IMG/VR virus record: IMGVR_UViG_3300023174_000039
Coordinates: 186,001-250,000 of that record
Length of the DNA: 64,000 nt
Strand: one strand, 5' to 3'
Made by a program: the position numbers and the translations under genes. Numbering within the stretch: position 1 is the stretch's first letter; the number at the start of each line of letters is the position of its first letter. Positions 30,868 through 57,119 of this stretch are shown piece by piece. The notes below the pieces were generated by a model that was given only the letters and a program-made list of their open reading frames with translations, was not told the origin of the DNA and searched no databases.

Positions 30868-30942
30868 GCGCCTATAGCTTAATGGTAAAGCAGGGGACTC
30901 ATAATCCCTTGAGTCGTGGTTCGATCCCACGTGGGCGCACCA
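30868..30942 (+). tRNA. tRNA with CAT anticodon, probably tRNA-Ile2 (lysidine type)
   Basis: Cloverleaf with GGGGA-ctCATaa-TCCCT and encoded CCA; anticodon arm resembles Ile2. Confidence 0.85.
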
Positions 30943-30947
30943 TTTTT

Positions 30948-31022
30948 CTGGCCATAGTATAATGGATAATACAGTAGCCTTCTAAGCTATCAATCTAGGT
31001 TCGATTCCTAGTGGCCGGACCA
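30948..31022 (+). tRNA. tRNA-Arg(TCT)
   Basis: GTAGC-ctTCTaa-GCTAT; TTCGA T-loop; CCA. Confidence 0.92.
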
Positions 31023-31056
31023 AGCTCTGTTAAATAACAGACACTAGGAGAGCACT

Positions 31057-31218
31057 ATGGCTTCATTTATCACAGCAGTAAAATCGGCATTGGAAAAAAA
31101 GCATGCCGCACAACATCCTGATGCAAAACCCGTCAAAGGTTCCAAGTCAGTTAAAAAACCAACAGCACCACAGCCAGTGGGTAAACCTGTTAAAAAGGTC
31201 ACTGGCCGGGGCGGATAA
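31057..31218 (+). CDS. 53-aa Lys/Pro-rich basic protein between tRNAs
   Basis: TAAATA at 31031, AGGAG SD; MASFITAVKSALEKKHAAQHPDAKPVKGSKSVKKPTAPQPVGKPVKKVTGRGG. Confidence 0.7.
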   Translation: MASFITAVKSALEKKHAAQHPDAKPVKGSKSVKKPTAPQPVGKPVKKVTGRGG

Positions 31219-31225
31219 CGCACAA

Positions 31226-31309
31226 GCGAGTGTGGGGGAATAGGTAGACCCAGCAGACTTAAAATCTGCCGCGTAATGCGTACCGGTTCGATTCCGGTCA
31301 CTCGTACCA
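31226..31309 (+). tRNA. tRNA-Leu(TAA)
   Basis: GCAGA-ctTAAaa-TCTGC; variable arm; CCA. Confidence 0.93.
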
Positions 31310-31318
31310 TTTTATATC

Positions 31319-31876
31319 ATGACCAAGATAAACAGTAGCCCCGATCGACACACCTTTCAAAAAGAAGGTTATGTTAAACGCTGTGAGGAACAAGGCAAGT
31401 TGCCTAATCCTGACTATGTTGAAATGTACAAAACCTGGCGTGAACAAGATGCGGCAAATCTTGTGGATCCCGAGTGGCAAAACAACAACATGGAGTACGA
31501 CCTGCGTAGTACCAAATGGATCTGCGACAAAGTCAAGGCCAGCGACAGCTATGCTCAAAATCTGTATGCAGCCATGTGCAACATGCAATTTGTAAAAAAC
31601 GAAGTATGGCCTTTGCTCAAGGACCAACGCTGGAGTGCCAGTTGGCGCAGTGCTGGAGGCATTGTGGCTGACATGCATGAACAAGGTGACTATATTGACT
31701 GGTACTGTTCGGGCATTGGTGGCATGATGGGAGGCGGTAGTGAGTCCAGTCCAGCAACAGAAGCAGCCTTGCTGGCCAGAAAAAACTATGTGCCAGAGGG
31801 CACTGTCACTGATGAGATCCGAGCAGACTTATTTCAACTGGGATGGATTCCAAAAGAGTGGGACAGTGATGAGTGA
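31319..31876 (+). CDS. Conserved phage hypothetical protein
   Basis: YAQNLYAAMCN...WSASWRSAGGIVADM...YIDWYCSG. Confidence 0.8.
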   Translation: MTKINSSPDRHTFQKEGYVKRCEEQGKLPNPDYVEMYKTWREQDAANLVDPEWQNNNMEYDLRSTKWICDKVKASDSYAQNLYAAMCNMQFVKNEVWPLLKDQRWSASWRSAGGIVADMHEQGDYIDWYCSGIGGMMGGGSESSPATEAALLARKNYVPEGTVTDEIRADLFQLGWIPKEWDSDE

Positions 31877-32507
31877 CCATACCTATTATAAAAAACTCAA
31901 CTTGCCGGCTAACCCGTTAAAGGACAGCCGAGCGGTGTCTCAGATGTCGATCACTGGTGTTTATGACATAGTAGAACCCCATGCGATTCTAACAGATGAA
32001 ATACTTTCTATCTTTGACAGTCTTGAGTTGCGTGTGAAAATGGTTGCATTGTTTGGTCGTATGGACGGTACTTCTACCAAACATGATAGACTGATACATG
32101 CTGACCTTTACAAAAACAATGCTGATGTGCGTGGATGGTCAAAACTGGTAGCCGGCGTGAATTGGGAGATCGAAGGGTCGCACAATGTTTTTTATTGGTA
32201 TGACATGTCAAAACTTGACGAGCACTGGCCGCCTGTAGTGGGATCAGGTACATCAAAGTATGATTTGTTGAATGGCATACACTACGGACAACGTGGCAAT
32301 CACGGAGTTTATCCCGAGCAGGCAGTGGTACTAGAACACACCACCATTGACGGTCCCACACTAGTGAGAACTGACATTCCACACTCGACATTGTATCACA
32401 ATCCCAACACATACCGAGTGGGGGTCAGTGTTAGATTTTTTGAAGAAGACTTTGATCACAATTGGGAAACAGTATTGGCAAAGTTTCAACCAGTGTTTCT
32501 CAAATAA
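31869..32507 (+). CDS. Hypothetical protein
   Basis: Likely start MSDHTYY at 31869, overlapping the upstream stop. Confidence 0.68.
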   Translation: MSDHTYYKKLNLPANPLKDSRAVSQMSITGVYDIVEPHAILTDEILSIFDSLELRVKMVALFGRMDGTSTKHDRLIHADLYKNNADVRGWSKLVAGVNWEIEGSHNVFYWYDMSKLDEHWPPVVGSGTSKYDLLNGIHYGQRGNHGVYPEQAVVLEHTTIDGPTLVRTDIPHSTLYHNPNTYRVGVSVRFFEEDFDHNWETVLAKFQPVFLK

Positions 32508-32510
32508 ATA

Positions 32511-32580
32511 AGAGTTAAGACTGTATGAAGTTGACAGAAAAGGATTCAAGACCCGGGGGCAGTTCCCGGCAGGTCCACCA
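32511..32580 (+). ncRNA. ssrA: Permuted tmRNA, acceptor (3') piece; 5' end approximate
   Basis: GATTCAA-GAC-CCGGG-GGCAGTT-CCCGG-CAGGTCC-ACCA gives the T arm and 3' acceptor strand. TAAATA promoter at 32505-10. Confidence 0.9.
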
Positions 32581-32603
32581 TAAGGAGATTGAATAAATAC
32601 TAG

Positions 32604-32909
32604 ATGCGAATAAAAGAACTGACTGAATCATTTAACAAGTGCTATGATATGGCATGTAAAATGTATGATTACGCAAAGGCTAAAAATTTGCATCCTAAAC
32701 TAATACAAGTAGCAGATTATAAAGGCGATGGTTCCGGTGCTGATAAACGCTGGCAAAAACTACCGCAAAGAGTGTGGCAACATTATGTCACAGTAATCGG
32801 CAATAAAGTCTACGATCCAACTGCTAAACAGTTTGGTCCTGACAACGATACTGAATATAGTTTAGAAAGATTAGATGCTGACTGGGGACAACAGTATCTA
32901 ATTAAATAA
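32604..32909 (+). CDS. 101-aa protein encoded inside the tmRNA intervening segment; possible Cys-His-Asp (papain/transglutaminase-like) fold
   Basis: KCYDMA...QHYVTVIGNKVYDPTAKQF; TAAGGAG at 32581 and TAAATA at 32594-99. Confidence 0.75.
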   Translation: MRIKELTESFNKCYDMACKMYDYAKAKNLHPKLIQVADYKGDGSGADKRWQKLPQRVWQHYVTVIGNKVYDPTAKQFGPDNDTEYSLERLDADWGQQYLIK

Positions 32910-32922
32910 GTCTTTTTATGAT

Positions 32923-33105
32923 GGGCCTGACATAGATATCGATTGGGTCAAGAGTACGGAAATGGACAGTCCGGCAATGTAGAAGCCGTTAGGGTTGGGG
33001 GAACTTGGCCGAAGACACAAAAACCGTAAATGCAAACGACGAACAGTTCGCTTTAGCCGCCTAAACTCGGCTTAGGGTAGGAAATACCTCGTAACAGAAA
33101 CCACC
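32923..33105 (+). ncRNA. ssrA: Permuted tmRNA, coding (5') piece with tag ANDEQFALAA
   Basis: GGGCCTG pairs with CAGGTCC and includes G3:U70. GTAAAT-GCA resume site. Tag ORF 33032-33064 is GCA AAC GAC GAA CAG TTC GCT TTA GCC GCC TAA. Confidence 0.92.
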
Positions 33106-33133
33106 AAAAAAGGGCACTTTGGTGCCCTTTTTC
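33106..33133 (+). terminator. Intrinsic terminator, bidirectional
   Basis: AAAAAAGGGCAC-tttg-GTGCCCTTTTTT. Confidence 0.9.
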
Positions 33134-33192
33134 TTTGACTTCTTAGTATAAACGCTATATACTAGTTGATATTCATTTTATAAGGAAAAATA

Positions 33193-34086
33193 ATGACAAC
33201 AACAATTACAATCAAGGACAAAGCAGTAAACACAACATATCAAAATGTCACAGGGTTGACAGGTGGCTCAGGCGACGGCGCCGCATTTGATGTTACCAAG
33301 ACCAATGGTGTTTATTCCGTTGTGTTAGACGCATTGGCAGCCAGTGCTGGCCGCAACTATGTGGCAGGTGATACTATTACTCTTGCTGGCACAGCACTGG
33401 GTGGTACAAGTGCCAACAACTTGATCGTCACAGTGGGCACAGTTGGTACTGCCGGTAAGATTGCTACATTTGGTGTAGTGGGCACAGGCCGTGTTGGCGA
33501 TGGCACAGTAGACGTACAAGTTGATGTTACTGGTACCAGTGGCATTGACACTTATACTGTAGGTGGTGCCAGTACAGAGTACACAACAACCAAGACCGCA
33601 AGTGCAGTTACATTGGCCAGTTCACTGGTCAGCAATTTAGAAATTAAACTTGCTGATCACGAGCGTGTGGTGTTCACAGACAAAGCCATTGCATATGATG
33701 CCGCAGGCCGTGCAGGTGATGTATATGCATTGTTGGCAGCCGCACTTGGTGTTAGTGATGTTACTCGAGCCTACGAAGGCATTGGCATCTATCTTGCAGA
33801 TGCAGGTTGGACCAACAAACAATTGGCCACTGCATTGTTGGCCACTGATACATACAAGGCCGACGCCGGTGGTGTCAGTGACGAAACATTCATCAAGCAT
33901 GTTTATAAAAATGTCACAGGTACCACTGCCACAATCGCAGATGTTACTGCATTAACAAACTGGATGACTGCCAACAAGTACAGTCAAGCAGATGTACTGG
34001 TCATTGCCAGCGAATTGCCAGCATTTGAAACAGCAATTGGCCTGGTTGGATTGGCAACAACTGGCATTGAATATACTCCTGTATAA
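33193..34086 (+). CDS. S-layer/RTX-associated-like protein with a C-terminal DUF4214-like domain
   Basis: Thr/Gly/Ala/Val-rich beta region, then DHERVVFTDKAIAYDAAGRAGDVYALL...SDETFIKHVYKNV. Own promoter TTGACT 33136/TATACT 33159 and TAAGGA SD. Confidence 0.72.
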   Translation: MTTTITIKDKAVNTTYQNVTGLTGGSGDGAAFDVTKTNGVYSVVLDALAASAGRNYVAGDTITLAGTALGGTSANNLIVTVGTVGTAGKIATFGVVGTGRVGDGTVDVQVDVTGTSGIDTYTVGGASTEYTTTKTASAVTLASSLVSNLEIKLADHERVVFTDKAIAYDAAGRAGDVYALLAAALGVSDVTRAYEGIGIYLADAGWTNKQLATALLATDTYKADAGGVSDETFIKHVYKNVTGTTATIADVTALTNWMTANKYSQADVLVIASELPAFETAIGLVGLATTGIEYTPV

Positions 34087-34102
34087 TACAACCGGCCCAG
34101 AC

Positions 34103-34129
34103 AAAAAGGCTGTTTTCACAGCCTTTTTT
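34103..34129 (+). terminator. Intrinsic terminator
   Basis: AAAAAGGCTGT-tttc-ACAGCCTTTTT. Confidence 0.9.
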
Positions 34130-34202
34130 GTTGATTAAATGTAAACATCGCTATATAATATAGATTGACTACCAAGTCAATTTAAACAAGGAAATTTAAA
34201 AA

Positions 34203-34742
34203 ATGAAAAAATTTGCATTCGCATCACTCTTGGCTTTGGCCTCTTTCGCTTCTTCTGCACAGTATGTGTCAGTTGATGTGGACCATGTAAAGACCAGTCG
34301 TGGTCAGGAAAGTTCTGCACAGTACATCCGTGCTGGCAAAACCATCAGTGGCATTGACTACGGTCTCCAAAGCCGCACAGGTGTTGGCAACAAAGGTGGC
34401 ATGTTCAACAGCCTAGAAGTCACAGCTGGCAGCAAACTGGGTTCTTTCGCGCCGTTCGTGGGCGTGGGCTATGACAATGGCTTTAACGGTTCACCTGCTG
34501 GTTCATACACATATGGCTTGTTGGGCGTAACAACTGGTGCCAAGGTTGGTCCAGGTTTTGCATTTGGTGGTGTCAAGACTCGACTGGGTTCTAGTGCCAA
34601 AGTAGAAACAAAACAAACAGTGGCGTTTGGTACTTACAGTTTACCCATTGCCAAGAACCTTGCACTCAACGTGAATGCAAGCAAGAGCTACCAAGACATC
34701 AAAGAAACAGCTTATGGTGTTGGCCTAGCGTTTGGGTTTTAA
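34203..34742 (+). CDS. Small outer-membrane beta-barrel (porin-like) protein
   Basis: Sec signal MKKFAFASLLALASFASSA; alternating beta strands; C-terminal YGVGLAFGF fits a BAM signal ending in Phe. Confidence 0.8.
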   Translation: MKKFAFASLLALASFASSAQYVSVDVDHVKTSRGQESSAQYIRAGKTISGIDYGLQSRTGVGNKGGMFNSLEVTAGSKLGSFAPFVGVGYDNGFNGSPAGSYTYGLLGVTTGAKVGPGFAFGGVKTRLGSSAKVETKQTVAFGTYSLPIAKNLALNVNASKSYQDIKETAYGVGLAFGF

Positions 34743-34768
34743 ATGTAATACTTAATAGTTACATTTAC

Positions 34769-34795
34769 AAAAAACCCGCACTAGGCGGGTTTTTT
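34769..34795 (+). terminator. Intrinsic terminator
   Basis: AAAAAACCCGC-actag-GCGGGTTTTTT. Confidence 0.9.
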
Positions 34796-34803
34796 ATTGG
34801 CGG

Positions 34804-34930
34804 TTGACTGAATATTCTGAATTTGCTACAATAGAAACAAGTTAAGAAATACAGCAAAGTTTGCAAAGCCCTTATAAAGAAAAAGGACTTTGCAAAACAA
34901 GTTGACAAGTAAATCACAAGATGTTATACT
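34804..34930 (+). promoter_or_regulatory. Tandem sigma70 promoters of the main tRNA/ncRNA operon
   Basis: TTGACT 34804/TACAAT 34827 and TTGACA 34902/TATACT 34925, both with 17-nt spacers. Confidence 0.8.
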
Positions 34931-35017
34931 AGAGACTAGTTAGGAAATAGTAGATCGAGACTGTTTCAAGAGTTCGTTAAAAATTCAATTTTGTATAGTA
35001 CTCGGATCCAATCCGGG

Positions 35018-35260
35018 CACTATATGTAAGCACATTGGGTTACCGCCCCAGTAGGTAATTTGACAAGAGATCAATCTGTGGCCGCACAGACTCTTCCAAG
35101 TTACATGAAAGATGGAAACGAAGCCGCAAGGTGGATACTGTATAATCGCGCTGGACCAGGTAGGCCTGTAATGTGTTTGACAAACAAGTCCGTGGACGAC
35201 ACGGTAGGGCAGAAAAAACTGCGATCTTTGTCCGACATCCTGATGTGTTTTCATATAGTG
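35018..35260 (+). ncRNA. Structured spacer RNA A
   Basis: Terminal helix CACTATATG/CATATAGTG plus AAGCACATT/GATGTGTTT; internal hairpins such as TCTGTG-gccg-CACAGA. Confidence 0.6.
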
Positions 35261-35267
35261 ATTTTTT

Positions 35268-35343
35268 GGTCTTAAAGTGTTCATGGACGCACGATGGCTT
35301 GTCACGCCATAAGAGTGGGGATCGTTACCCCCTAAGACCGCCA
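35268..35343 (+). tRNA. tRNA-Asp(GTC)
   Basis: ATGGC-ttGTCac-GCCAT; atypical T-loop ATCGTTA; CCA. Confidence 0.88.
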
Positions 35344-35349
35344 ACATTT

Positions 35350-35412
35350 GAGAGCCACTACGCCTGGATACTTCCCTCGCAAGAGGCACTAGGTCCTGCA
35401 ACCGTGGCTCTC
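35350..35412 (+). ncRNA. Small structured spacer B
   Basis: GAGAGCCAC/GTGGCTCTC 9-bp closing helix; CCTC-gcaa-GAGG hairpin. Confidence 0.5.
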
Positions 35413-35420
35413 CCTTATTT

Positions 35421-35496
35421 GCTCGGTTCATCTAGCGGTCTAGGATAGTGCCCTTTCACGGCATTCACACGGGTTCGAATCCCGTACCGAGCTCCA
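35421..35496 (+). tRNA. tRNA-Glu(TTC)
   Basis: GTGCC-ctTTCac-GGCAT; CCA. Confidence 0.93.
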
Positions 35497-35501
35497 CACA
35501 T

Positions 35502-35586
35502 GGAGATGCCGCCGCAATGGTGTGGCAGGGGACTGTAACTCCTCCGACTTCGGTCACGATAGGTTCGATCCCTATCATCTCCACCA
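35502..35586 (+). tRNA. tRNA-Tyr(GTA)
   Basis: ctGTAac loop; variable arm GAC-ttcg-GTC; CCA. Confidence 0.88.
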
Positions 35587-35590
35587 GAAC

Positions 35591-35778
35591 GTTCCGGGTG
35601 TCTCCGGATAGTCAGACCCTGACGATGAGAAGTAGTGTGACAACTACGGGTGGTAGTCTTCAAACCCAAAGGCCGCTAGCAATGCGAGAACGGTCCCTGT
35701 CGGGAAGCGGGTGGAAGGAGTATGTGATGGATACGATAGCGTCGTATCTTGATACTCTACAATTACCGCCGGGGGATG
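35591..35778 (+). ncRNA. GC-rich structured spacer RNA C
   Basis: Hairpins TCCGG/CCGGA, GTCAG/TGAC and GTAGT/ACTAC; nested GCGGGT..GGAGTAT..GATACGA/TCGTATC..ATACTCT..ACCGC. Confidence 0.6.
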
Positions 35779-35791
35779 CAGAGCATGTTTG

Positions 35792-35949
35792 TTTTTATAG
35801 TCAAGCATCGATAAAGGTATCGTGACAGGACGCTGTCACTATTCGGGCCTAACTGTGCGAGGAACAGGTCCTGACATAACTGCCATTCGCTTGTCAGAGC
35901 TAGCTACTTTGTTGACAAATCGGCATCTCTCGGTGCTTGACTATAAAAA
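35792..35949 (+). ncRNA. Structured spacer RNA D
   Basis: 20-bp terminal helix TTTTTATAGTCAAGCATCGA/TCGGTGCTTGACTATAAAAA with one G-U pair. Confidence 0.65.
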
Positions 35950-35952
35950 TAC

Positions 35953-36030
35953 GCACAGGTGGCAGAGTGGTCCAATGCACGGGATTGCAAATCCTGAAAG
36001 CCGTGAGTTCAAATCTCACCCTGTGCTCCA
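35953..36030 (+). tRNA. tRNA-Cys(GCA)
   Basis: ttGCAaa loop; U discriminator; CCA. Confidence 0.9.
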
Positions 36031-36034
36031 GTTT

Positions 36035-36228
36035 TTATATTGATAACAGTGTGTTAAAAACTCTTTGACCAAGGGCCCAACTGCTAGGGAATTATTGATC
36101 CAAAAACCGCTGAGCGGACGAAAGTTGCGGCGGACTGCTAGTCACAGTCACACATGTTTTTGGAAGGATGCTGGTGTAGCAATACAGCAGGGACCTTTAA
36201 ACACACAGCAGTATTGTTATCAATATAA
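36035..36228 (+). ncRNA. Structured spacer RNA E
   Basis: 14-bp perfect helix TTATATTGATAACA/TGTTATCAATATAA, then GTGTGTTAAA/TTTAAACACAC. Confidence 0.65.
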
Positions 36229-36235
36229 GTACTAC

Positions 36236-36310
36236 CGCGGGGTGGAGAAGTAGTAACTCATCAGGCTCATAACCTGAAGATCGGCGGTGCGAATCCGTCC
36301 CCCGCATCCA
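36236..36310 (+). tRNA. Initiator-like tRNA-Met(CAT)
   Basis: C1:A72 mismatch; CGCGGGG 5' end; TCAGG-ctCATaa-CCTGA. Confidence 0.85.
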
Positions 36311-36326
36311 ATTTTACCATTTGTGG

Positions 36327-36355
36327 TTGACTTTCAATCATAAATAAACTACAAT
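36327..36355 (+). promoter_or_regulatory. Sigma70 promoter with nested TAAATA
   Basis: TTGACT 36327-32, 17 nt spacer, TACAAT 36350-55; TAAATA at 36341-46. Confidence 0.75.
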
Positions 36356-36365
36356 AGAAACTAAC

Positions 36366-36479
36366 ATGAAAACACAAAACTATTCATTTGCTAAGCCATC
36401 CATGTTTGTCCAGCCTTCAGCCTGGACGCATGCGAACGGTCGCGTGAATAGCATTCCAGGAGATCCGGGGTCCGTGTAA
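36366..36479 (+). CDS. Putative 37-aa leader peptide
   Basis: MKTQNYSFAKPSMFVQPSAWTHANGRVNSIPGDPGSV; starts about 10 nt after the -10 box and precedes the terminator/antiterminator. Confidence 0.55.
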   Translation: MKTQNYSFAKPSMFVQPSAWTHANGRVNSIPGDPGSV

Positions 36480-36504
36480 AGTACATTAGTATTCTACTCA
36501 AAGG

Positions 36505-36538
36505 ACCCTGGAACTAAACACTCCAGGGTTTTTCTTTT
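36505..36538 (+). terminator. Intrinsic terminator with an overlapping antiterminator
   Basis: ACCCTGGA/TCCAGGGT plus TTTTCTTTT; alternative pairing GGGGTCC 36467-73 with GGACCCT 36503-09. Confidence 0.82.
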
Positions 36539-36629
36539 AGTGCAATGGCAACGAGAGCCGGCATCACTCAAAACTGCAAATGGGCGGCCTGTAGGATGGA
36601 ACACTATTTGTAGTGTGAAAAATTACAGC

Positions 36630-36685
36630 GTATTAAAGCATTCTTTAAGAACAGGCAGCCTAAGTATTTTAGAGTGCTTTAATAC
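36630..36685 (+). ncRNA. Long hairpin spacer F
   Basis: 15-bp stem GTATTAAAGCATTCT/AGAGTGCTTTAATAC. Confidence 0.55.
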
Positions 36686-36708
36686 ACACATTCGTAAGAG
36701 TGTGTCGG

Positions 36709-36782
36709 GTATCTCTGGTGTAATGGCAGCACCGCGGTCTCCAAAACCGTCAGTCAAGGTTCGAGTCCTTGGAGGTACGCCA
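36709..36782 (+). tRNA. tRNA-Trp(CCA)
   Basis: GCGGT-ctCCAaa-ACCGT; CCA end. Confidence 0.92.
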
Positions 36783-36787
36783 CACAT

Positions 36788-36861
36788 GGGCTGGTAGTTA
36801 AATGGGATAACGGTGGCTTTGCAAGCCTCAGTTGGGAGTTCGATTCTCCCTCGGTCCACCA
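36788..36861 (+). tRNA. tRNA-Ala(TGC)
   Basis: ttTGCaa loop; G3:U70. Confidence 0.92.
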
Positions 36862-36869
36862 AATTAAAT

Positions 36870-36898
36870 TTGACACAACCGTGTGTCTGCTATATAAT
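36870..36898 (+). promoter_or_regulatory. Sigma70 promoter
   Basis: TTGACA-17-TATAAT. Confidence 0.82.
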
Positions 36899-36905
36899 AG
36901 CATGT

Positions 36906-36995
36906 CGAGAGCGGGCAGGACGGTAATGCAGCGGATTGCTAATCCGTAGACCGTAGTAATACGGTCACTGGGTTCGACTCCCAGGCTCTCGGCCA
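36906..36995 (+). tRNA. tRNA-Ser(GCT)
   Basis: GCGGA-ttGCTaa-TCCGT; long variable arm. Confidence 0.92.
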
Positions 36996-37006
36996 CATCA
37001 ATCAAT

Positions 37007-37082
37007 TCCCTAGTAGCTCAGTCGGTAGAGTAGCAGACTGTTAATCTGTTGGTCACACGTTCGAACCGTGTCTGGGGAGCCA
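37007..37082 (+). tRNA. tRNA-Asn(GTT)
   Basis: GCAGA-ctGTTaa-TCTGT. Confidence 0.93.
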
Positions 37083-37087
37083 AACAA

Positions 37088-37163
37088 GCCCTTATAGCTC
37101 AGCTGGTAGAGCAACTGATTTGTAATCAGTAGGTCCCGTGTTCGAATCATGGTGGGGGCACCA
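37088..37163 (+). tRNA. tRNA-Thr(TGT)
   Basis: ACTGA-ttTGTaa-TCAGT. Confidence 0.93.
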
Positions 37164-37166
37164 ATC

Positions 37167-37242
37167 GCTCTCATAGCTCTAGTGGTAGAGCATACCCTTG
37201 GTAAGGGTAAGGTCACGTGTTCGAATCACGTTGAGAGCACCA
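37167..37242 (+). tRNA. tRNA-Thr(GGT)
   Basis: TACCC-ttGGTaa-GGGTA. Confidence 0.93.
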
Positions 37243-37251
37243 ATTCATTTC

Positions 37252-37328
37252 AGCTTCATAGCTCAGTTGGTTAGAGCACCGTGTTGATAACGCGGGGGTC
37301 CTGTGTTCGAGTCACAGTGAAGCTACCA
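37252..37328 (+). tRNA. tRNA-Ile(GAT)
   Basis: CCGTG-ttGATaa-CGCGG. Confidence 0.93.
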
Positions 37329-37379
37329 AATTTTTAAAGGAGAGTCCCTATGGACAGTGATAAGAGTGGGAAGATTTGT

Positions 37380-37455
37380 GGGACGTTAGCTCAGTTGGTA
37401 GAGCAGTAGACTTTTAATCTATTGGTCATTGGTTCAAATCCAATACGTCCTACCA
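37380..37455 (+). tRNA. tRNA-Lys(TTT)
   Basis: GTAGA-ctTTTaa-TCTAT. Confidence 0.93.
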
Positions 37456-37524
37456 TATAAAAACACACTTGGTATGCCCATAGCATACAGAGACATCAGA
37501 AACGTGAGTGTGTTTCTATATGGT
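37452..37524 (+). ncRNA. Structured spacer G linking tRNA-Lys and tRNA-His
   Basis: ACCATATA/TATATGGT plus AAACACACT/AGTGTGTTT. Confidence 0.6.
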
Positions 37525-37598
37525 GCTTGTCGTCAAGCGGTTAAGACCTCGGATTGTGATTCCGATATACGTGGGTTCGAATCCCATCAAGCACCCCA
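37522..37598 (+). tRNA. tRNA-His(GTG)
   Basis: G-1:C73; TCGGA-ttGTGat-TCCGA. Confidence 0.93.
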
Positions 37599-37599
37599 T

Positions 37600-37674
37600 G
37601 GATGTATAGCACAGCGGTAGTGCATCTCCTTCATACGGAGCAGGTCAGTAGTTCAAATCTACTTACATCCACCA
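37600..37674 (+). tRNA. tRNA with CAT anticodon, probably elongator Met
   Basis: CTCC-ttCATac-GGAG; fully paired acceptor stem; CCA. Confidence 0.82.
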
Positions 37675-37685
37675 TAACATTTTGT

Positions 37686-37759
37686 TGGGGGTTAGTTAAA
37701 TGGTATAACATCGGATTTTGATTCCGAGATCACAAGTTCGATTCTTGTACCCTCTGCCA
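37686..37759 (+). tRNA. tRNA-Gln(TTG)
   Basis: TCGGA-ttTTGat-TCCGA; unpaired 1:72. Confidence 0.9.
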
Positions 37760-37764
37760 CATAT

Positions 37765-37841
37765 CGGTCCTTAACTCAATTGGATAGAGTGCCAGTCTTC
37801 GAAACTGGAAGTTGGGAGTTCGACTCTCTCAGGACCGGCCA
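37765..37841 (+). tRNA. tRNA-Arg(TCG)
   Basis: CCAGT-ctTCGaa-ACTGG. Confidence 0.92.
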
Positions 37842-37880
37842 GTTTTTAACCTTGTATAATACTAGCCTATAAATATTTCC

Positions 37881-38642
37881 ATGAAGAAAGCACTTATACT
37901 TGGATGTAGTCATGCCGCTGGTTCAGAAATGATTGATGAGCCAGAAATTGATTTGTTAAACTATGGCAAAGACTACTATGGATACTGTATGAGTTATCCC
38001 TCACAGTTGGCACAATTGTTGGGGTACCATCCCGTAAATCATGCTATCCCTGGTGGTAGCAATGATGCAATGTTTAGAATATTTGAATCGTTTGTCAACC
38101 CTTACAAGAACTTTGAAAAGCCTGACATTGTGTTTGTATGTTGGACCGGTGGCGAACGTACCGAGGTATGGGACTTTGAAGAAGGCAACTGGATTGGCCT
38201 TGCTGGCGGTAAAACTAATTTTACAAAAACAATTCCTGATAGTGTTATACGGGAAGGGAAAATTATTCCTGAACCTATTATTAACGCCGATAACATTGTT
38301 ACATATCAAAAACAATGGATCACTCATCATGCTGATCGCTGGTGGGGTCGATTGAACAAGTTAAAAAACATACTGGCACTGAACACCATGGCAGCTCAAG
38401 AGAAGATCCCGGTTATTAATCTTGATAGTTTTGGTGCAGTGCAAGAATACACATTTCCCGACACAGTATATCGTCCCTTGGGACAAACTGAGTTTTGTAA
38501 CTGGGCGGTCGAGCGTGGATTCAACAACACCAAGTCGGGACATTACTTTTTGCAAGCACACAGAAGTTTTGCAAACTTCATTGCCAAAAAAGTTGATCCA
38601 AAGTATCATGCAGATAACATCGGAAAGATCATAACAGAATAA
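37881..38642 (+). CDS. SGNH/GDSL-like protein inside the tRNA array
   Basis: LILGCSH, NHAIPGGSN, SGHYFLQAH; TATAAATA ends 5 nt before the ATG. Confidence 0.7.
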   Translation: MKKALILGCSHAAGSEMIDEPEIDLLNYGKDYYGYCMSYPSQLAQLLGYHPVNHAIPGGSNDAMFRIFESFVNPYKNFEKPDIVFVCWTGGERTEVWDFEEGNWIGLAGGKTNFTKTIPDSVIREGKIIPEPIINADNIVTYQKQWITHHADRWWGRLNKLKNILALNTMAAQEKIPVINLDSFGAVQEYTFPDTVYRPLGQTEFCNWAVERGFNNTKSGHYFLQAHRSFANFIAKKVDPKYHADNIGKIITE

Positions 38643-38646
38643 TAAT

Positions 38647-38720
38647 GCGGGGCTCGTATAGTGGTAATACCTTAGCCTTCCAAGCTAAAGCGAGGGGTTC
38701 GATTCCCCTGCCCCGCTCCA
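38647..38720 (+). tRNA. tRNA-Gly(TCC)
   Basis: TTAGC-ctTCCaa-GCTAA. Confidence 0.93.
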
Positions 38721-38726
38721 CTTATT

Positions 38727-38802
38727 GCGCGGTTAACTCAGTCGGTAGAGTTCTTGCCTTACACGCAGGCTGTCGGCGGTTCGAGCCCGTCACCGCGCAC
38801 CA
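38727..38802 (+). tRNA. tRNA-Val(TAC)
   Basis: CTTGC-ctTACac-GCAGG. Confidence 0.93.
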
Positions 38803-38808
38803 CACATT

Positions 38809-38885
38809 CGGAGTGTAGCACAGCCTGGTAGTGCGCCTGGTTTGGGACCAGGAGGTCGTAGGTTCGAATCCTACTATTCCGACCA
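38809..38885 (+). tRNA. tRNA-Pro(TGG)
   Basis: CCTGG-ttTGGga-CCAGG. Confidence 0.93.
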
Positions 38886-38892
38886 CCTTTTT

Positions 38893-38984
38893 GGAAGATG
38901 ATGCAGTGGGGTTGGTCCCGCGACTGGCCTTGAAAACCAGGTTCTCTTAACAGGGATGGGGTTCGACTCCTCCGTCTTCCGCCA
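38893..38984 (+). tRNA. tRNA-Ser(TGA)
   Basis: ctTGAaa loop; long variable arm; G discriminator. Confidence 0.88.
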
Positions 38985-39028
38985 AATTAATTGACACCGC
39001 AGATGTTGTGTGTTATTATGATAGTTAG

Positions 39029-39113
39029 GCCCAGGTGGCGAAATTGGTAGACGCACCAGATTTAGGTTCTGGCGTAGAAATATGTGTCGGTTCGAGTCCG
39101 ACCCTGGGCACCA
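39029..39113 (+). tRNA. tRNA-Leu(TAG)
   Basis: CCAGA-ttTAGgt-TCTGG; variable arm. Confidence 0.93.
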
Positions 39114-56059: not shown

Positions 56060-57119
56060 CAATCTCCGCACAGAGATTTTAGACGCCACTGACGAAGTTC
56101 TTCGCAGTGGTCAACTCATGAACGGCAACAACACCGTTGAGTTTGAAGCATGGCTTGCAAAACGCAATCATGTACGTTATGCAGTAACTTGTCATTCAGG
56201 CACACATGCACTTGAAATTCTAGCCAGTTACTGGGCAACATGCGACCGTCTTGCACCACATCCTCCTACTGTGTTAATACCCTCAATGACTTATGTGGCC
56301 ACTGCCAATGCATTTATACGTGCAGGCTGGGATATACACATCATTGACACAGACATACACGGCCTAATAGATGTCAACAAAATACCCGAAAATTTAAGTT
56401 ACCAGGCCATTGTAATGGTTGGCTTGTATGGTGCGGCTGTAACACATCACGGCAATGTTCGTGCCTGGAACCAATGGCTACATCGTGATACCATTATAAT
56501 TGAAGATGCCGCACAACATTGGTTGGCAGCAGGTAGCGCCAGGACTGGTCGTGGTGGCGCTGCCATCAGTTTTGATCCCATGAAGAACTTGGCTTGTTAT
56601 GGCAATGGTGGTGCTGTGGTTACAGACAATCTGGATCTAGCAGAATATGCAAGGGCCTGGCGTGACAACGGTAAACCTACGCATCGTAATCCTGGAACTA
56701 ACAGCCGCATGAGTGAACTAGACTGTGCTCATATGTTGGTCAAAGCAAAGCACATTGATCAGTGGCAGGCACGTAGACAAAGTATTGCCGATCACTGGTG
56801 TGAAAGATTTAAAAATGCAAACATACGCTGTTTGATCAACGACTCAAATGCACACAACCATGCTGTGCATAAGTTTGTGATAGATGCTGATGGTCGAGAT
56901 ACACTAAAGGCCAATCTCTCTCTGCGCAAAATTGATACACGAGTGCATTATGCAAATCCCTTGCATGAAATGAGTTTGTATCGTGCATATCCAGGTCCTG
57001 ATATGCTGGCCGCAAGTTCTAGTCTTGCTCGTCGTGTGCTAAGTCTGCCTATCTATCCTGAACTAACAGACCTAGAAGTTGAATACATCAGCGATCAGGT
57101 GTTAGACTGCGTCGCATAA
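55971..57119 (+). CDS. DegT/DnrJ/EryC1/StrS aminotransferase; start uncertain
   Basis: HSGTHAL, EDAAQ, SFDPMKNLACYGNGGAVVT, LSLPIYP. Confidence 0.9.
   Translation: MIPKWMYKKDSKITSTGLTIPFTGLKKQYNNLRTEILDATDEVLRSGQLMNGNNTVEFEAWLAKRNHVRYAVTCHSGTHALEILASYWATCDRLAPHPPTVLIPSMTYVATANAFIRAGWDIHIIDTDIHGLIDVNKIPENLSYQAIVMVGLYGAAVTHHGNVRAWNQWLHRDTIIIEDAAQHWLAAGSARTGRGGAAISFDPMKNLACYGNGGAVVTDNLDLAEYARAWRDNGKPTHRNPGTNSRMSELDCAHMLVKAKHIDQWQARRQSIADHWCERFKNANIRCLINDSNAHNHAVHKFVIDADGRDTLKANLSLRKIDTRVHYANPLHEMSLYRAYPGPDMLAASSSLARRVLSLPIYPELTDLEVEYISDQVLDCVA

What the first reader, a model, noticed from the sequence alone, without database searches (positions are those of the whole stretch)
32511..33105. Phage-encoded permuted two-piece tmRNA with a protein-coding gene inside the excised intervening segment
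Seen: the 3' half of the tRNA-like domain (T arm, CAGGTCC-ACCA, ending at 32580) lies upstream of the 5' half (GGGCCTG at 32923). Together they form an acceptor stem with G3:U70, and the downstream piece carries the tag ANDEQFALAA. The 342-nt intervening segment holds a complete 101-aa ORF. Its ends form a 12-bp helix (32579-90 with 32909-20, three G-U pairs) that buries the ORF's TAAGGAG SD. Known: two-piece tmRNAs occur in Alphaproteobacteria, some cyanobacteria and some Betaproteobacteria, and the intervening segments I know of are short and noncoding. Inference: tmRNA maturation (RNase P 5' cut, CCA trimming) would release the ORF as an mRNA and free its SD, coupling protein output to tmRNA processing. 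Alternatively the segment is a landing pad for mobile cargo.
Basis: partly seen in the sequence, partly recalled or inferred. Interest (0 to 1): 0.92.

Follow-up and report, generated by a model that had tools for sequence, protein, structure and literature searches.

The report
Phage two-piece tmRNA carrying a gene
A jumbo phage encodes a permuted (two-piece) tmRNA whose normally discarded middle segment holds a real 101-aa protein gene, and this is one example of a large, apparently undescribed habit: related phage tmRNA genes use this hairpin-closed segment as a swappable slot for dozens of different small genes.

Summary
Rfam's permuted-tmRNA model scores 74.8 bits (threshold 47) on 32519-33064. 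The acceptor stem has G3:U70, the tag is ANDEQFALAA, and the 342-nt intervening segment (IVS) holds a 101-aa ORF under purifying selection (dN/dS 0.09-0.21).

The wider picture is new. At least 175 IMG/VR phage loci carry tmRNA genes with the same acceptor stem.
- Their IVSs range from 28 to 551 nt.
- 73 of 145 distinct IVSs hold ORFs, forming about 49 unrelated families. These include thioredoxin, GNAT and DUF2061.
- An AGGA in the 5' strand of the stem usually sits 3-7 nt before the start codon.

The ORF-bearing block is 90-100% identical between tmRNA genes whose other parts differ, so it is exchanged by recombination.

Both helix strands lie on the excised piece, so the GGAG stays paired after excision (unpaired probability 0.01). 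It also lies 16 nt from the AUG. The "cargo landing pad" alternative is strongly supported. How the ORF is expressed remains inferred.

The parts
32503..32510 (+). AATAAATA motif 8 nt upstream of the acceptor piece; a possible promoter for the tmRNA precursor (a lead only)
   Evidence: WATAAATA occurs 9 times in the window, all on the + strand, against 5.6 expected on both strands. Other copies lie just upstream of the tRNA cluster (30836) and the DNA polymerase ORF (4650). The sigma-70 consensus scan finds no promoter between 32200 and 32519.
32519..32580 (+). Acceptor piece of the two-piece tmRNA: 5' strand of helix P2, T arm (32553-32569), acceptor 3' strand (32570-32576), discriminator A (32577) and encoded CCA (32578-32580)
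   Evidence: Alignment to RF04321; MFE fold; 92% identical to the acceptor pieces of ORF-less phage tmRNAs L040, L032, L028 and L022.
32579..32590 (+). 5' strand of the IVS closing stem. It starts with the CA of CCA and contains TAAGGAG.
   Evidence: 12 bp with 3 G-U, about -9.8 kcal/mol. The same register is conserved in 44 distinct stems at 95.2% canonical pairs, against 39-64% for shifted registers and 69.5 +/- 1.6% for partner shuffles.
32581..32922 (+). Intervening segment (IVS), 342 nt, removed when the two tmRNA pieces mature
   Evidence: Treated as an insertion in the RF04321 alignment. Family IVS lengths run from 28 to 551 nt.
32591..32603 (+). Conserved A/U-rich leader between the stem and the AUG, containing AATAAATA at 32592-32599. 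Predicted single-stranded in all states.
   Evidence: Nearly invariant among ORF-bearing relatives (only 32591-32592 vary) even where dS of the ORF is 1.4. Unpaired probability 0.9 in the precursor and the excised IVS. The same leader precedes unrelated cargo ORFs in L179/L207 and L190, and a gene downstream of the tmRNA in L130.
32604..32909 (+). Protein-coding gene, 101 aa: a small domain with near-invariant Cys13, His60 and Asp71 and a probable papain-like fold
   Evidence: dN/dS 0.09-0.21, with differences concentrated at codon position 3. 143 profile hits, most as a domain inside 180-1447-aa proteins that also carry deaminase, GNAT, NUDIX or HAD domains. Triad conservation in 150 sequences. 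AF2 model pLDDT 86.6. Weak Foldseek hits are nearly all papain-like folds, none significant. No Pfam or PHROG family.
32909..32920 (+). 3' strand of the IVS closing stem, starting with the last base of the ORF's TAA stop codon
32921..32922 (+). Two unpaired leader nucleotides (AU of the family-constant UGAU) before the predicted RNase P site
   Evidence: TGAT precedes G1 in 153 of 175 family loci. RNase P cleavage itself is inferred from general tRNA and tmRNA biology.
32923..33105 (+). Coding piece: acceptor 5' strand (32923-32929), 3' strand of P2, structured region, tag reading frame 33032-33064 (ANDEQFALAA plus stop) and 3' hairpins
   Evidence: RF04321 alignment to 33064; beta_tmRNA (RF01850) aligns the tag and 3' part at 57.9 bits, below its threshold of 84. 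94% and 88% identical to the coding pieces of ORF-less L108 and L061, for which ARAGORN calls the identical tag.
33107..33132 (+). Intrinsic terminator ending the tmRNA transcription unit
   Evidence: 11-bp stem followed by a T run. It is followed by a 10/12 sigma-70-like promoter at 33135-33163 for the next gene.

Best explanation
This is a working permuted ssrA gene of a 331-kb jumbo phage. Its intervening segment is a hairpin-closed cargo slot, and here the slot carries a real gene for a 101-aa Cys-His-Asp domain protein.

**Shown by computation**
- The tmRNA parts are intact and score as a permuted tmRNA.
- The closing stem next to the acceptor stem is an ancestral, covarying feature of a large phage tmRNA family, present with or without an ORF.
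- The ORF is under purifying selection, and its relatives exist elsewhere as ordinary genes or as domains of larger proteins.
- The block made of the tRNA-like domain plus IVS plus ORF has been moved by recombination between otherwise different tmRNA genes and phage genomes.
- Many other unrelated small genes occupy the same slot in related phages.

**Inferred**
- The precursor is transcribed as one RNA, ending at the terminator at 33107-33132.
- RNase P cuts before G32923, and 3' maturation trims to A32580. This releases the acceptor piece, the coding piece, and the IVS as a separate RNA whose two ends are held in a stem of about 10 bp.
- The closing stem mainly serves the tmRNA. It brings the two halves of the acceptor stem together whatever lies between them, and that is what makes the IVS tolerant of inserts.
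- In the window the ORF is probably translated from its open A/U-rich leader (32591-32603) rather than from the distant, stem-buried GGAG. Its output would then accompany tmRNA transcription without being gated by tmRNA cleavage.
- In relatives with the AUG 3-7 nt after the AGGA, the stem should restrict initiation largely to the period before the 3' strand is transcribed.
For: **The tmRNA is real and intact**
- RF04321 scores 74.8, 101 and 84.9 bits in the window, L002 and L003.
- G3:U70, the encoded CCA and the tag ANDEQFALAA are read directly from the sequence.
- ARAGORN calls permuted tmRNAs, some with the same tag, in relatives with shorter IVSs.
- The T arm shows compensatory changes between the window and L002.

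**The stem is a family feature**
- 44 distinct stems are 95.2% canonical. Shifted registers give 39-64% and partner shuffles give at most 74.3%.
- The stem is present in ORF-less IVSs and in the cultured phage Melnitz.

**The ORF is a real gene**
- dN/dS is 0.09-0.21.
- Homologues occur outside any tmRNA, in L131 and L132.
- 143 profile hits share an invariant Cys, His and Asp.

**The IVS is a cargo slot**
- 145 distinct IVSs were found; 73 hold ORFs, falling into 49 clusters.
- 44 of the 46 IVSs of 150 nt or more hold an ORF by the criteria used, with a median 0.92 of the IVS covered on the sense strand against 0.36 on the antisense strand.
- Pfam confirms thioredoxin, DUF2061, GNAT and CxxCxxCC among the cargo.
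- Other cargo ORFs have dN/dS of 0.09-0.3.
- RGGA at the start of the IVS associates with ORF presence, Fisher p = 9e-10.

**The block is exchanged**
- L002 and L008 are 100% identical from -35 to +365 relative to CCA, with flanks at 45-65% identity.
- The window's acceptor and coding pieces are 92-94% identical to those of ORF-less tmRNAs.

**Folding**
- The GGAG is paired in both the precursor and the excised IVS, while the leader before the AUG is open.
Against: - No expression data exist: the phage is known only from metagenomes, so transcription as one precursor, the cleavage sites and translation are all inferred.
- No consensus promoter was found upstream of 32519.
- An AATAAATA motif lies inside the IVS, 4 nt before the AUG, and could be an independent promoter.
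- A 342-nt insert might slow or impair tmRNA maturation.
- The family was collected with patterns that fix the acceptor-stem sequence. The proportions are therefore not prevalence estimates. In the scan that was unbiased for IVS type, 25 of 76 distinct IVSs held an ORF, and a few of the short ones are probably chance.
- The protein's fold assignment rests on a conserved triad and on non-significant Foldseek hits.
Confidence: 0.7

Rival explanations
1. One reading: the closing helix hides the ORF's Shine-Dalgarno sequence in the precursor, and tmRNA maturation (RNase P cut plus CCA trimming) frees it, so that protein output depends on tmRNA processing.
For: The GGAG is fully paired in the precursor. 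Across the family, an AGGA in the 5' strand of the stem goes with ORF presence, usually 3-7 nt from the start codon. If the cut after CCA were made inside the stem by a double-strand-specific nuclease such as RNase III, the stem would be shortened and the model could work; the acceptor stem, the 2x2 loop and the closing stem together span about 21 bp. That last point is inference only.
Against: Cuts exactly at CCA and G1 leave 10 of the 12 pairs on the excised RNA, and the GGAG's unpaired probability stays at 0.01. In the window the GGAG is 16 nt from the AUG, while the 13 nt before the AUG are open regardless of the stem. The stem also exists in ORF-less IVSs, so it did not evolve for this ORF.
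Confidence: 0.12
2. Kinetic-window model: ribosomes load only while the RNA is nascent, before the 3' strand at the end of the ORF is transcribed. Once the stem forms it shuts off initiation and commits the RNA to tmRNA maturation, so each transcript gives a short burst of protein.
For: The GGAG's unpaired probability is 0.39-0.50 in nascent RNA lacking the 3' strand, against 0.00-0.01 afterwards. In 31 of 73 cargo ORFs the stop codon is the UGA of the constant UGAU and the last codons form the 3' strand, so the SD pairs with the end of its own ORF. From my own knowledge this resembles delayed-folding control of the MS2 maturation gene and the 5'-3' fold-back of hok mRNA.
Against: In the window type the AUG is moved 16 nt away from the GGAG and its immediate leader is open in all states, so this variant may escape such control. 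The stem is only about -10 kcal/mol. There are no experimental data.
Confidence: 0.3
3. The ORF is an independent gene with its own start signal inside the IVS (AATAAATA-CTAG-ATG at 32592-32606). It is transcribed or translated without reference to the tmRNA, and its position is just a tolerated insertion.
For: WATAAATA is strand-biased in the window (9 of 9 on the + strand). It lies 2-5 nt before ATGs at 37868 and 54063, as well as before the tRNA cluster and the tmRNA. The same leader precedes a gene that follows the tmRNA terminator in L130. The leader is nearly invariant (only 32591-32592 vary) while synonymous sites are saturated.
Against: No -35 element is present and the consensus scan calls no promoter there. 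If the motif behaves like a T4-type late promoter, the start site would fall inside or after the AUG (my own knowledge of T4 late promoters, so only a lead). There is no terminator between the acceptor piece and the ORF, so read-through from upstream is expected anyway. The motif is rare across the other viral loci fetched.
Confidence: 0.25
4. The insertion has killed the tmRNA gene: what remains is a decaying ssrA pseudogene around an ordinary phage gene.
For: The IVS is well beyond the 28-232 nt seen in the ORF-less or small-ORF relatives of the first scan. ARAGORN does not call the gene.
Against: All tmRNA elements are intact and score above Rfam's threshold in three diverged ORF-bearing versions. 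The tags differ between versions but all keep the tag frame, starting AND and ending in a hydrophobic tail (AA, or NA in L003) before a stop. The T arm shows compensatory changes. The arrangement persists in at least five sequence variants and several phage backgrounds.
Confidence: 0.04

Closest known systems
Two-piece (permuted) tmRNA of Alphaproteobacteria, a betaproteobacterial lineage and cyanobacteria, and of aquatic phages such as Methylophilales phage Melnitz (PMC11915505, PMC9004378)
   Same: The gene order is the same: acceptor piece with CCA, then IVS, then coding piece with the tag. It matches Rfam RF04321. Melnitz has the same closing stem and the constant UGAU before G1.
   Different: Described IVSs are treated as short spacers. 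The 2025 database paper singles out only a tRNA-Ala gene and a repetitive element inside IVSs. Here the IVS carries a 101-aa protein gene, and in relatives about 49 other ORF families. The beta-specific model RF01850 is not reached (57.9 bits against 84).
Intron-form tmRNA genes, in which a group I intron in the T loop sometimes carries a homing endonuclease gene (PMC11915505)
   Same: A protein gene sits inside a segment that is removed from the tmRNA precursor, and the insert is mobile between tmRNA genes.
   Different: There is no intron. No group I family appears in the local Rfam scan. The segment is removed by ordinary end-processing of a permuted gene, not by splicing. The pieces are not rejoined. 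The window's cargo has no nuclease signature.
Hyperplastic regions and exchangeable small-gene cassettes of T4-type phages, such as the internal-protein locus and promoter-stem-loop cassettes (my own knowledge; not tested here)
   Same: Many unrelated small genes alternate at one locus between conserved flanks. Exchange is by recombination in those flanks. Several cargo ORFs share a short N-terminal sequence.
   Different: Here the conserved flanks are the two halves of a tRNA-like domain and its precursor stem, so the cassette lies inside a structural RNA gene.
Long-range sequestration of a ribosome-binding site: MS2 maturation gene and the hok mRNA fold-back (my own knowledge)
   Same: The SD-like sequence pairs with a sequence hundreds of nucleotides downstream, at or near the 3' end of the same message.
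   Different: No evidence yet that translation is controlled this way here. The stem is primarily a tmRNA precursor feature.
tRNA-mRNA co-transcripts released by RNase P (bacterial tRNA-tufB operon, mitochondrial tRNA punctuation; my own knowledge)
   Same: A message is delimited by tRNA-type processing sites.
   Different: Here both boundaries belong to one tRNA-like domain, whose halves flank the message.

Membership tests
Permuted two-piece tmRNA (Rfam RF04321) | Score at or above the curated gathering threshold of the covariance model | tested here: met
   74.8 bits against 47 in the window. L002 scores 101 and L003 scores 84.9. The hit is found only in a local scan with lax filters; the whole-window scan at gathering thresholds missed it.
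Permuted two-piece tmRNA (Rfam RF04321) | The 3' half of the tRNA-like domain (T arm, acceptor strand, CCA) lies upstream of the 5' half, and together they form a 7-bp acceptor stem | tested here: met
   32570-32576 pairs with 32923-32929.
Permuted two-piece tmRNA (Rfam RF04321) | G3:U70 alanine identity pair | tested here: met
   G32925 pairs with T32574.
Permuted two-piece tmRNA (Rfam RF04321) | Tag reading frame that starts at an alanine resume codon and ends in a hydrophobic tail plus a stop codon | tested here: met
   GCA at 33032 through TAA at 33064 reads ANDEQFALAA. ARAGORN calls the identical tag in L061, L108 and L079.
Permuted two-piece tmRNA (Rfam RF04321) | Precursor cut into two base-paired pieces, charged with alanine and active in trans-translation | not testable with these tools
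   Needs RNA end-mapping, aminoacylation and tagging assays.
Betaproteobacterial tmRNA (Rfam RF01850) | Score at or above the gathering threshold | tested here: not met
   57.9 bits against 84. Only the tag and the 3' part align well.
Intron-form tmRNA / group I intron | Group I intron core interrupting the T loop | tested here: not met
   No group I intron family among matches up to E = 10 in 32300-33300. The insert lies between CCA and G1, not in the T loop.
Papain-like (Cys-His-Asp) hydrolase or transferase fold, for the ORF product | Conserved Cys at a helix start, with His and Asp on later strands | tested here: met
   Among residues aligned in 150 family sequences, Cys13 is kept in 137 of 139, His60 in 145 of 149 and Asp71 in 145 of 146. 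In the AF2 model Cys13 lies in helix 3-26, His60 is in strand 60-65, and Asp71 is just after strand 68-70.
Papain-like (Cys-His-Asp) hydrolase or transferase fold, for the ORF product | Significant structural or profile match to a known member | tested here: inconclusive
   The best Foldseek PDB hit has E = 0.2, although the top weak hits are calpain, CtaG, SseI, PPPDE and NAT folds. BFVD gives only uncharacterised phage proteins. There is no Pfam or PHROG family and no PDB sequence relative.
Homing-endonuclease-type mobile insert | Cargo encodes a nuclease (HNH, LAGLIDADG, GIY-YIG and the like) | tested here: not met
   The window ORF has no such family. One relative (L217, 193 aa) shows an HNH-like motif by eye, but Pfam reports nothing.
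T4-type capsid-targeted internal proteins | N-terminal targeting peptide ending in an (L/I)-x-E prohead-protease site; protein present in virions | not tested
   This rests only on a resemblance recalled from memory: MRIKELTE|S in the window ORF and similar N-termini in six other cargo families of about 100 aa or more. No protease gene was looked for and no virion data exist.

The most novel reading that the evidence does not exclude
Phage two-piece tmRNA genes have turned their discarded intervening segment into a dedicated expression platform. tRNA-type processing would release stem-capped mini-mRNAs for interchangeable small effector proteins. Some of these may be capsid-packaged, injected anti-host proteins, as hinted by the shared MRIKELTE-like N-termini and by cargo that includes GNAT acetyltransferases and this Cys-His-Asp domain. 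In 31 of 73 cargo ORFs the stop codon is the UGA one nucleotide before the RNase P site. After cleavage, such a message would end right at its stop codon, which would tie its fate to trans-translation by the very tmRNA it came from.
Probability: 0.15. Interest if true: 0.9.

Novelty: new variant of a known kind. Interest (0 to 1): 0.78.

Why it matters
Permuted tmRNAs, including phage-borne ones, are known, but their intervening segment has been treated as disposable spacer.

- **New gene arrangement.** If the segment is routinely a gene slot in phages, it is a new way of nesting protein genes inside a structural RNA gene. It also gives a new class of hypervariable phage locus, with conserved RNA-structure flanks that drive cassette exchange.
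- **A ready test case for RNA biology.** The SD sits in a precursor stem and the stop codon often sits at the RNase P site. This makes a natural system for asking how RNA processing, RNA folding and translation interact.
- **Practical consequences for annotation.** ARAGORN and default Rfam scans miss such long-insert tmRNAs, so the tmRNA goes unannotated. In the cultured phage Melnitz, which could serve as a laboratory model, the SD-preceded ORF in the IVS carries no CDS annotation.

Tried and rejected
- **ARAGORN and whole-window Rfam at gathering thresholds** found no tmRNA. Only a local, lax-filter scan did.
- **blastn against GenBank phages** gave no meaningful match to the window's tmRNA or its surroundings.
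- **The single genome-contig scan**, meant to find the host's tmRNA, was wasted. The T-loop plus acceptor pattern also matches ordinary tRNA-Ala genes in many phyla, so the host remains unknown and bacterial IVSs could not be surveyed.
- **A tRNA gene inside some IVSs** was suspected from T-arm-like hairpins in L073, L108 and L019, but ARAGORN calls no tRNA there.
- **L190's 151-aa cargo as a relative of the window ORF** gave an hhalign probability of only 42% over 22 residues, so it is not claimed.
- **L217 cargo as an HNH endonuclease** was not confirmed by Pfam.
- **The leader motif as a general phage start signal** is rare in 2 Mb of related loci outside this cassette type.
- **The sigma-70 consensus scan** found no promoter for the tmRNA.
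- **The original two-piece tmRNA papers** (PMC16621, PMC516066) are not held in the library. I therefore could not check what was said there about IVS structure.
- **Function of the protein:** Foldseek against PDB and BFVD and a PDB sequence search gave no significant functional assignment.
Full report
**1. What is in the window**

The window is part of IMG/VR contig 3300023174_000039, a 331,654-bp phage contig. The surroundings are phage-like:
- 24 tRNA genes between 30868 and 39113;
- a family B DNA polymerase and a 5'-3' exonuclease;
- nearly all genes on the + strand.

- The T arm is 32553-32569.
- CAGGTCC at 32570-32576 pairs with GGGCCTG at 32923-32929, including G32925:T32574, the G3:U70 pair.
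- The discriminator A is 32577 and CCA is 32578-32580.
- The tag frame runs from GCA at 33032 to TAA at 33062-33064 and reads ANDEQFALAA.

ARAGORN finds no tmRNA, and neither does a whole-window Rfam scan at gathering thresholds. A local scan gives RF04321 (tmRNA_permuted) at 74.8 bits, against a threshold of 47, over 32519-33064. About 300 nt are treated as an insertion between CCA and G1. The betaproteobacterial model RF01850 reaches only 57.9 of 84 bits.

The minimum-free-energy fold of 32511-33140 reproduces the T arm, the acceptor stem and the 12-bp helix between 32579-32590 and 32909-32920 (z = -4.1). An intrinsic terminator follows at 33107-33132, and then a strong sigma-70-like promoter for the next gene.

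**2. The ORF is a real gene**

ORF 32604-32909 (101 aa) has no Pfam or PHROG family. It has close relatives in metagenomes at 58-88% identity.

Between five distinct versions, dN/dS is 0.09-0.21, and differences cluster at third codon positions, for example 5, 4 and 21 at positions 1, 2 and 3.

Two relatives lie outside any tmRNA:
- P0005 is an ordinary gene in a tightly packed array (L131).
- P0007 carries the domain at the C-terminus of a longer protein with an HExxH motif (L132).

A profile search of 1.84 billion representative proteins gives 143 hits. Most of the best are a domain of about 95 aa inside proteins of 180-1447 aa. Those proteins also contain cytidine/dCMP deaminase, GNAT, NUDIX, HAD-type or DUF domains.

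Cys13, His60 and Asp71 are nearly invariant in 150 sequences. The AlphaFold model is confident, with pLDDT 86.6. Foldseek finds nothing significant, but its weak PDB hits are almost all papain-like Cys-His-Asp folds. BFVD returns uncharacterised phage proteins.

My reading is a small catalytic domain of the papain-like kind. Its substrate is unknown.

**3. The arrangement is conserved, and the helix is a family trait**

All close relatives of the ORF found in IMG/VR and ENA sit in the same place, with a 342-nt IVS between CCA and G1.

A pattern built on the acceptor 3' strand, and then a second pattern, retrieved many more phage loci. After requiring a T arm and a G1 motif, 175 loci remain. 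They have 145 distinct IVSs of 28-551 nt, 100 distinct acceptor pieces and 43 distinct T arms. ARAGORN calls most of the shorter-IVS members permuted tmRNAs, several with the identical tag ANDEQFALAA.

In nearly all members the IVS starts right after CCA with a strand that is complementary to the IVS's 3' end.
- UGAU precedes G1 in 153 of 175 loci.
- Over 44 distinct stems, the first ten IVS pairs are 95.2% canonical, with 2-6 pair types per position.
- Shifted registers give 39-64%. Shuffling partners among sequences gives 69.5 +/- 1.6%, with a maximum of 74.3%.

The helix is therefore real, but it also closes ORF-less IVSs, so it predates this ORF. The cultured Methylophilales phage Melnitz has it too.

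**4. The IVS is a cargo slot**

Of the 145 distinct IVSs, 73 hold an ORF of at least 30 aa that starts within 30 nt of CCA and fills at least 75% of the IVS. These form 49 clusters by blastp. Occupancy rises with IVS length:

| IVS length (nt) | Distinct IVSs with an ORF |
|---|---|
| under 60 | 1 of 13 |
| 60-100 | 8 of 50 |
| 100-150 | 20 of 36 |
| 150-250 | 26 of 27 |
| 250-450 | 16 of 17 |
| over 450 | 2 of 2 |

- For IVSs of 150 nt or more, the median sense-strand ORF covers 0.92 of the IVS. The antisense figure is 0.36.
- Pairs within clusters show dN/dS of 0.09-0.3.
- Pfam confirms real families among the cargo, all above their thresholds: thioredoxin (4e-21), DUF2061 (3.5e-20), GNAT and CxxCxxCC.
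- RGGA in the first 10 nt of the IVS goes with ORF presence: 63 of 90 with it against 10 of 55 without, p = 9e-10. It usually lies 3-7 nt before the start codon.
- In 31 of the 73, the stop codon is the UGA of UGAU, one nucleotide before G1.

The window type is different. Its GGAG is 16-17 nt from the AUG and its stop codon lies just inside the stem. It shares a longer, conserved A/U-rich leader with two other cargo types, L179/L207 and L190.

These proportions are not prevalence figures, because the second scan selected for AGGA. In the first scan, 25 of 76 distinct IVSs held an ORF.

**5. The cargo block moves**

- L002 and L008 are 100% identical from -35 to +365 relative to CCA. That span is the T arm, acceptor, IVS and first 23 nt of the coding piece. 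It is flanked by 45-65% identity on both sides.
- L003 and L008 show the reverse pattern: identical tmRNA flanks around ORF alleles that are only 75-80% identical.
- The window's acceptor and coding pieces are 92-94% identical to those of ORF-less tmRNAs L040, L032, L108 and L061, whose IVSs are unrelated.
- Flanking phage genes differ between carriers of the identical ORF.
- A homologue of another cargo gene (the 62-aa ORF of L030) lies 3 nt upstream of ssrA in Melnitz rather than inside it.

This is recombinational exchange with breakpoints in the conserved tRNA-like domain.

**6. How it probably works**

The anatomy, the conservation, the selection and the mosaicism are shown. The rest is inferred.
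- There is one precursor ending at the terminator.
- RNase P cuts before G32923.
- The 3' end is trimmed to A32580.
- The IVS is released as a separate RNA with its ends in a stem.

The GGAG's unpaired probability is 0.00 in the precursor and 0.01 in the exactly excised IVS, because both strands lie on the excised piece. It is 0.39-0.50 only in nascent RNA without the 3' strand. The 13 nt before the AUG are about 0.9 unpaired in the precursor and the excised IVS (0.64-0.72 in nascent RNA).

I therefore favour the following:
- The stem serves pre-tmRNA folding, and this makes the IVS tolerant of inserts.
- The window ORF is translated from its open leader.
- Short-leader relatives may be limited to co-transcriptional initiation.

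An internal start signal cannot be excluded. AATAAATA lies 4 nt before the AUG. WATAAATA occurs 9 times in the window, all on the + strand, and it also precedes the tmRNA, the tRNA cluster and two other ATGs.

**7. Comparison with what is known**

- Two-piece tmRNAs are established in three bacterial lineages and in aquatic phages. Melnitz is one example, and 53 unique two-piece genes were counted in isolate phages (PMC9004378).
- Huge phages carry tmRNA and SmpB (PMC7162821).
- The 2025 tmRNA database covers 11,946 permuted and 79 phage sequences. It notes only a tRNA-Ala gene and a repetitive element inside IVSs, and homing endonuclease genes only in the intron form (PMC11915505).
- Five literature searches found no description of protein genes in permuted-tmRNA IVSs. 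The original two-piece papers were not available to read.

**8. Verdict**

I rate it a new variant of a known kind, with high interest because the phenomenon is general across a large phage family and is directly testable.

Noticed in passing
window 4650, 30836, 32503, 32592, 37868, 39312, 39820, 46476, 54063: The motif WATAAATA occurs 9 times, all on the + strand. Copies lie just upstream of the DNA polymerase ORF, the first tRNA cluster and the tmRNA, and 2-5 nt before ATGs at 37881, 54073 and 32604. It may be this phage's promoter or start signal; it resembles the T4 late promoter TATAAATA as I recall it.
   Followed up: partly
window 30868-39113: There are 24 tRNA genes in several clusters on the + strand, interspersed with small ORFs. 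The tmRNA lies inside this translation-RNA region.
   Followed up: no
window 32604-32630; L144, L190, L182/L206/L216, L207, L178/L232, L199 cargo ORFs; L130 569-: Unrelated cargo proteins of about 100 aa or more share an N-terminus of the type M-(R/K/Q)-I-(K/N/S)-E-(L/I)..TE-S, with synonymous differences at the DNA level. It resembles a T4-type capsid-targeting peptide with an (L/I)xE protease site. This is a recalled resemblance and is untested.
   Followed up: partly
L355 (Methylophilales phage Melnitz MZ577097.1) about 1780-1990: The annotated ssrA of this cultured phage has a 141-nt IVS with the same closing stem. It also has an unannotated GGAG-N6-ATG ORF that reads through G1 into the coding piece. 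Gene 85, directly upstream of ssrA, is a homologue of the 62-aa ORF that sits inside the IVS in L030.
   Followed up: partly
L073, L108 (76-nt IVS), L019 (144-nt IVS): These IVSs contain T-arm-like hairpins (GGTTCGAnTCC) and are of tRNA-like length, but ARAGORN calls no tRNA in them. They may be tRNA-derived remnants.
   Followed up: partly
L073 72-541: ARAGORN gives overlapping calls here: a standard tmRNA, a tRNA-Ala and a permuted tmRNA with the same tag, ANDNTFALAA. This suggests a duplicated or rearranged locus.
   Followed up: no
L093 5013-5467; L070; L049: Some family members have unusually long predicted tags of 23-27 residues, for example one that starts ANVNKTV and ends EALAV.
   Followed up: no
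P0006 (ENA contig of 604 bp): This predicted protein joins the first roughly 72 residues of the cargo ORF to a fragment of an N6/N4 DNA methylase (PF01555). It is either a recombination junction or an assembly chimera.
   Followed up: no
window 57088-63231 (- strand): A 2047-aa ORF on the minus strand has no Pfam family at E <= 1e-4. It is one of the few minus-strand genes in the window.
   Followed up: no
family-wide: first 3 nt after CCA and last 4 nt before G1: CCA is followed by UAA in 110 loci or AAA in 47 loci, out of 175. G1 is preceded by UGAU in 153. Stop codons therefore bracket the IVS in a fixed position relative to the processing sites.
   Followed up: partly
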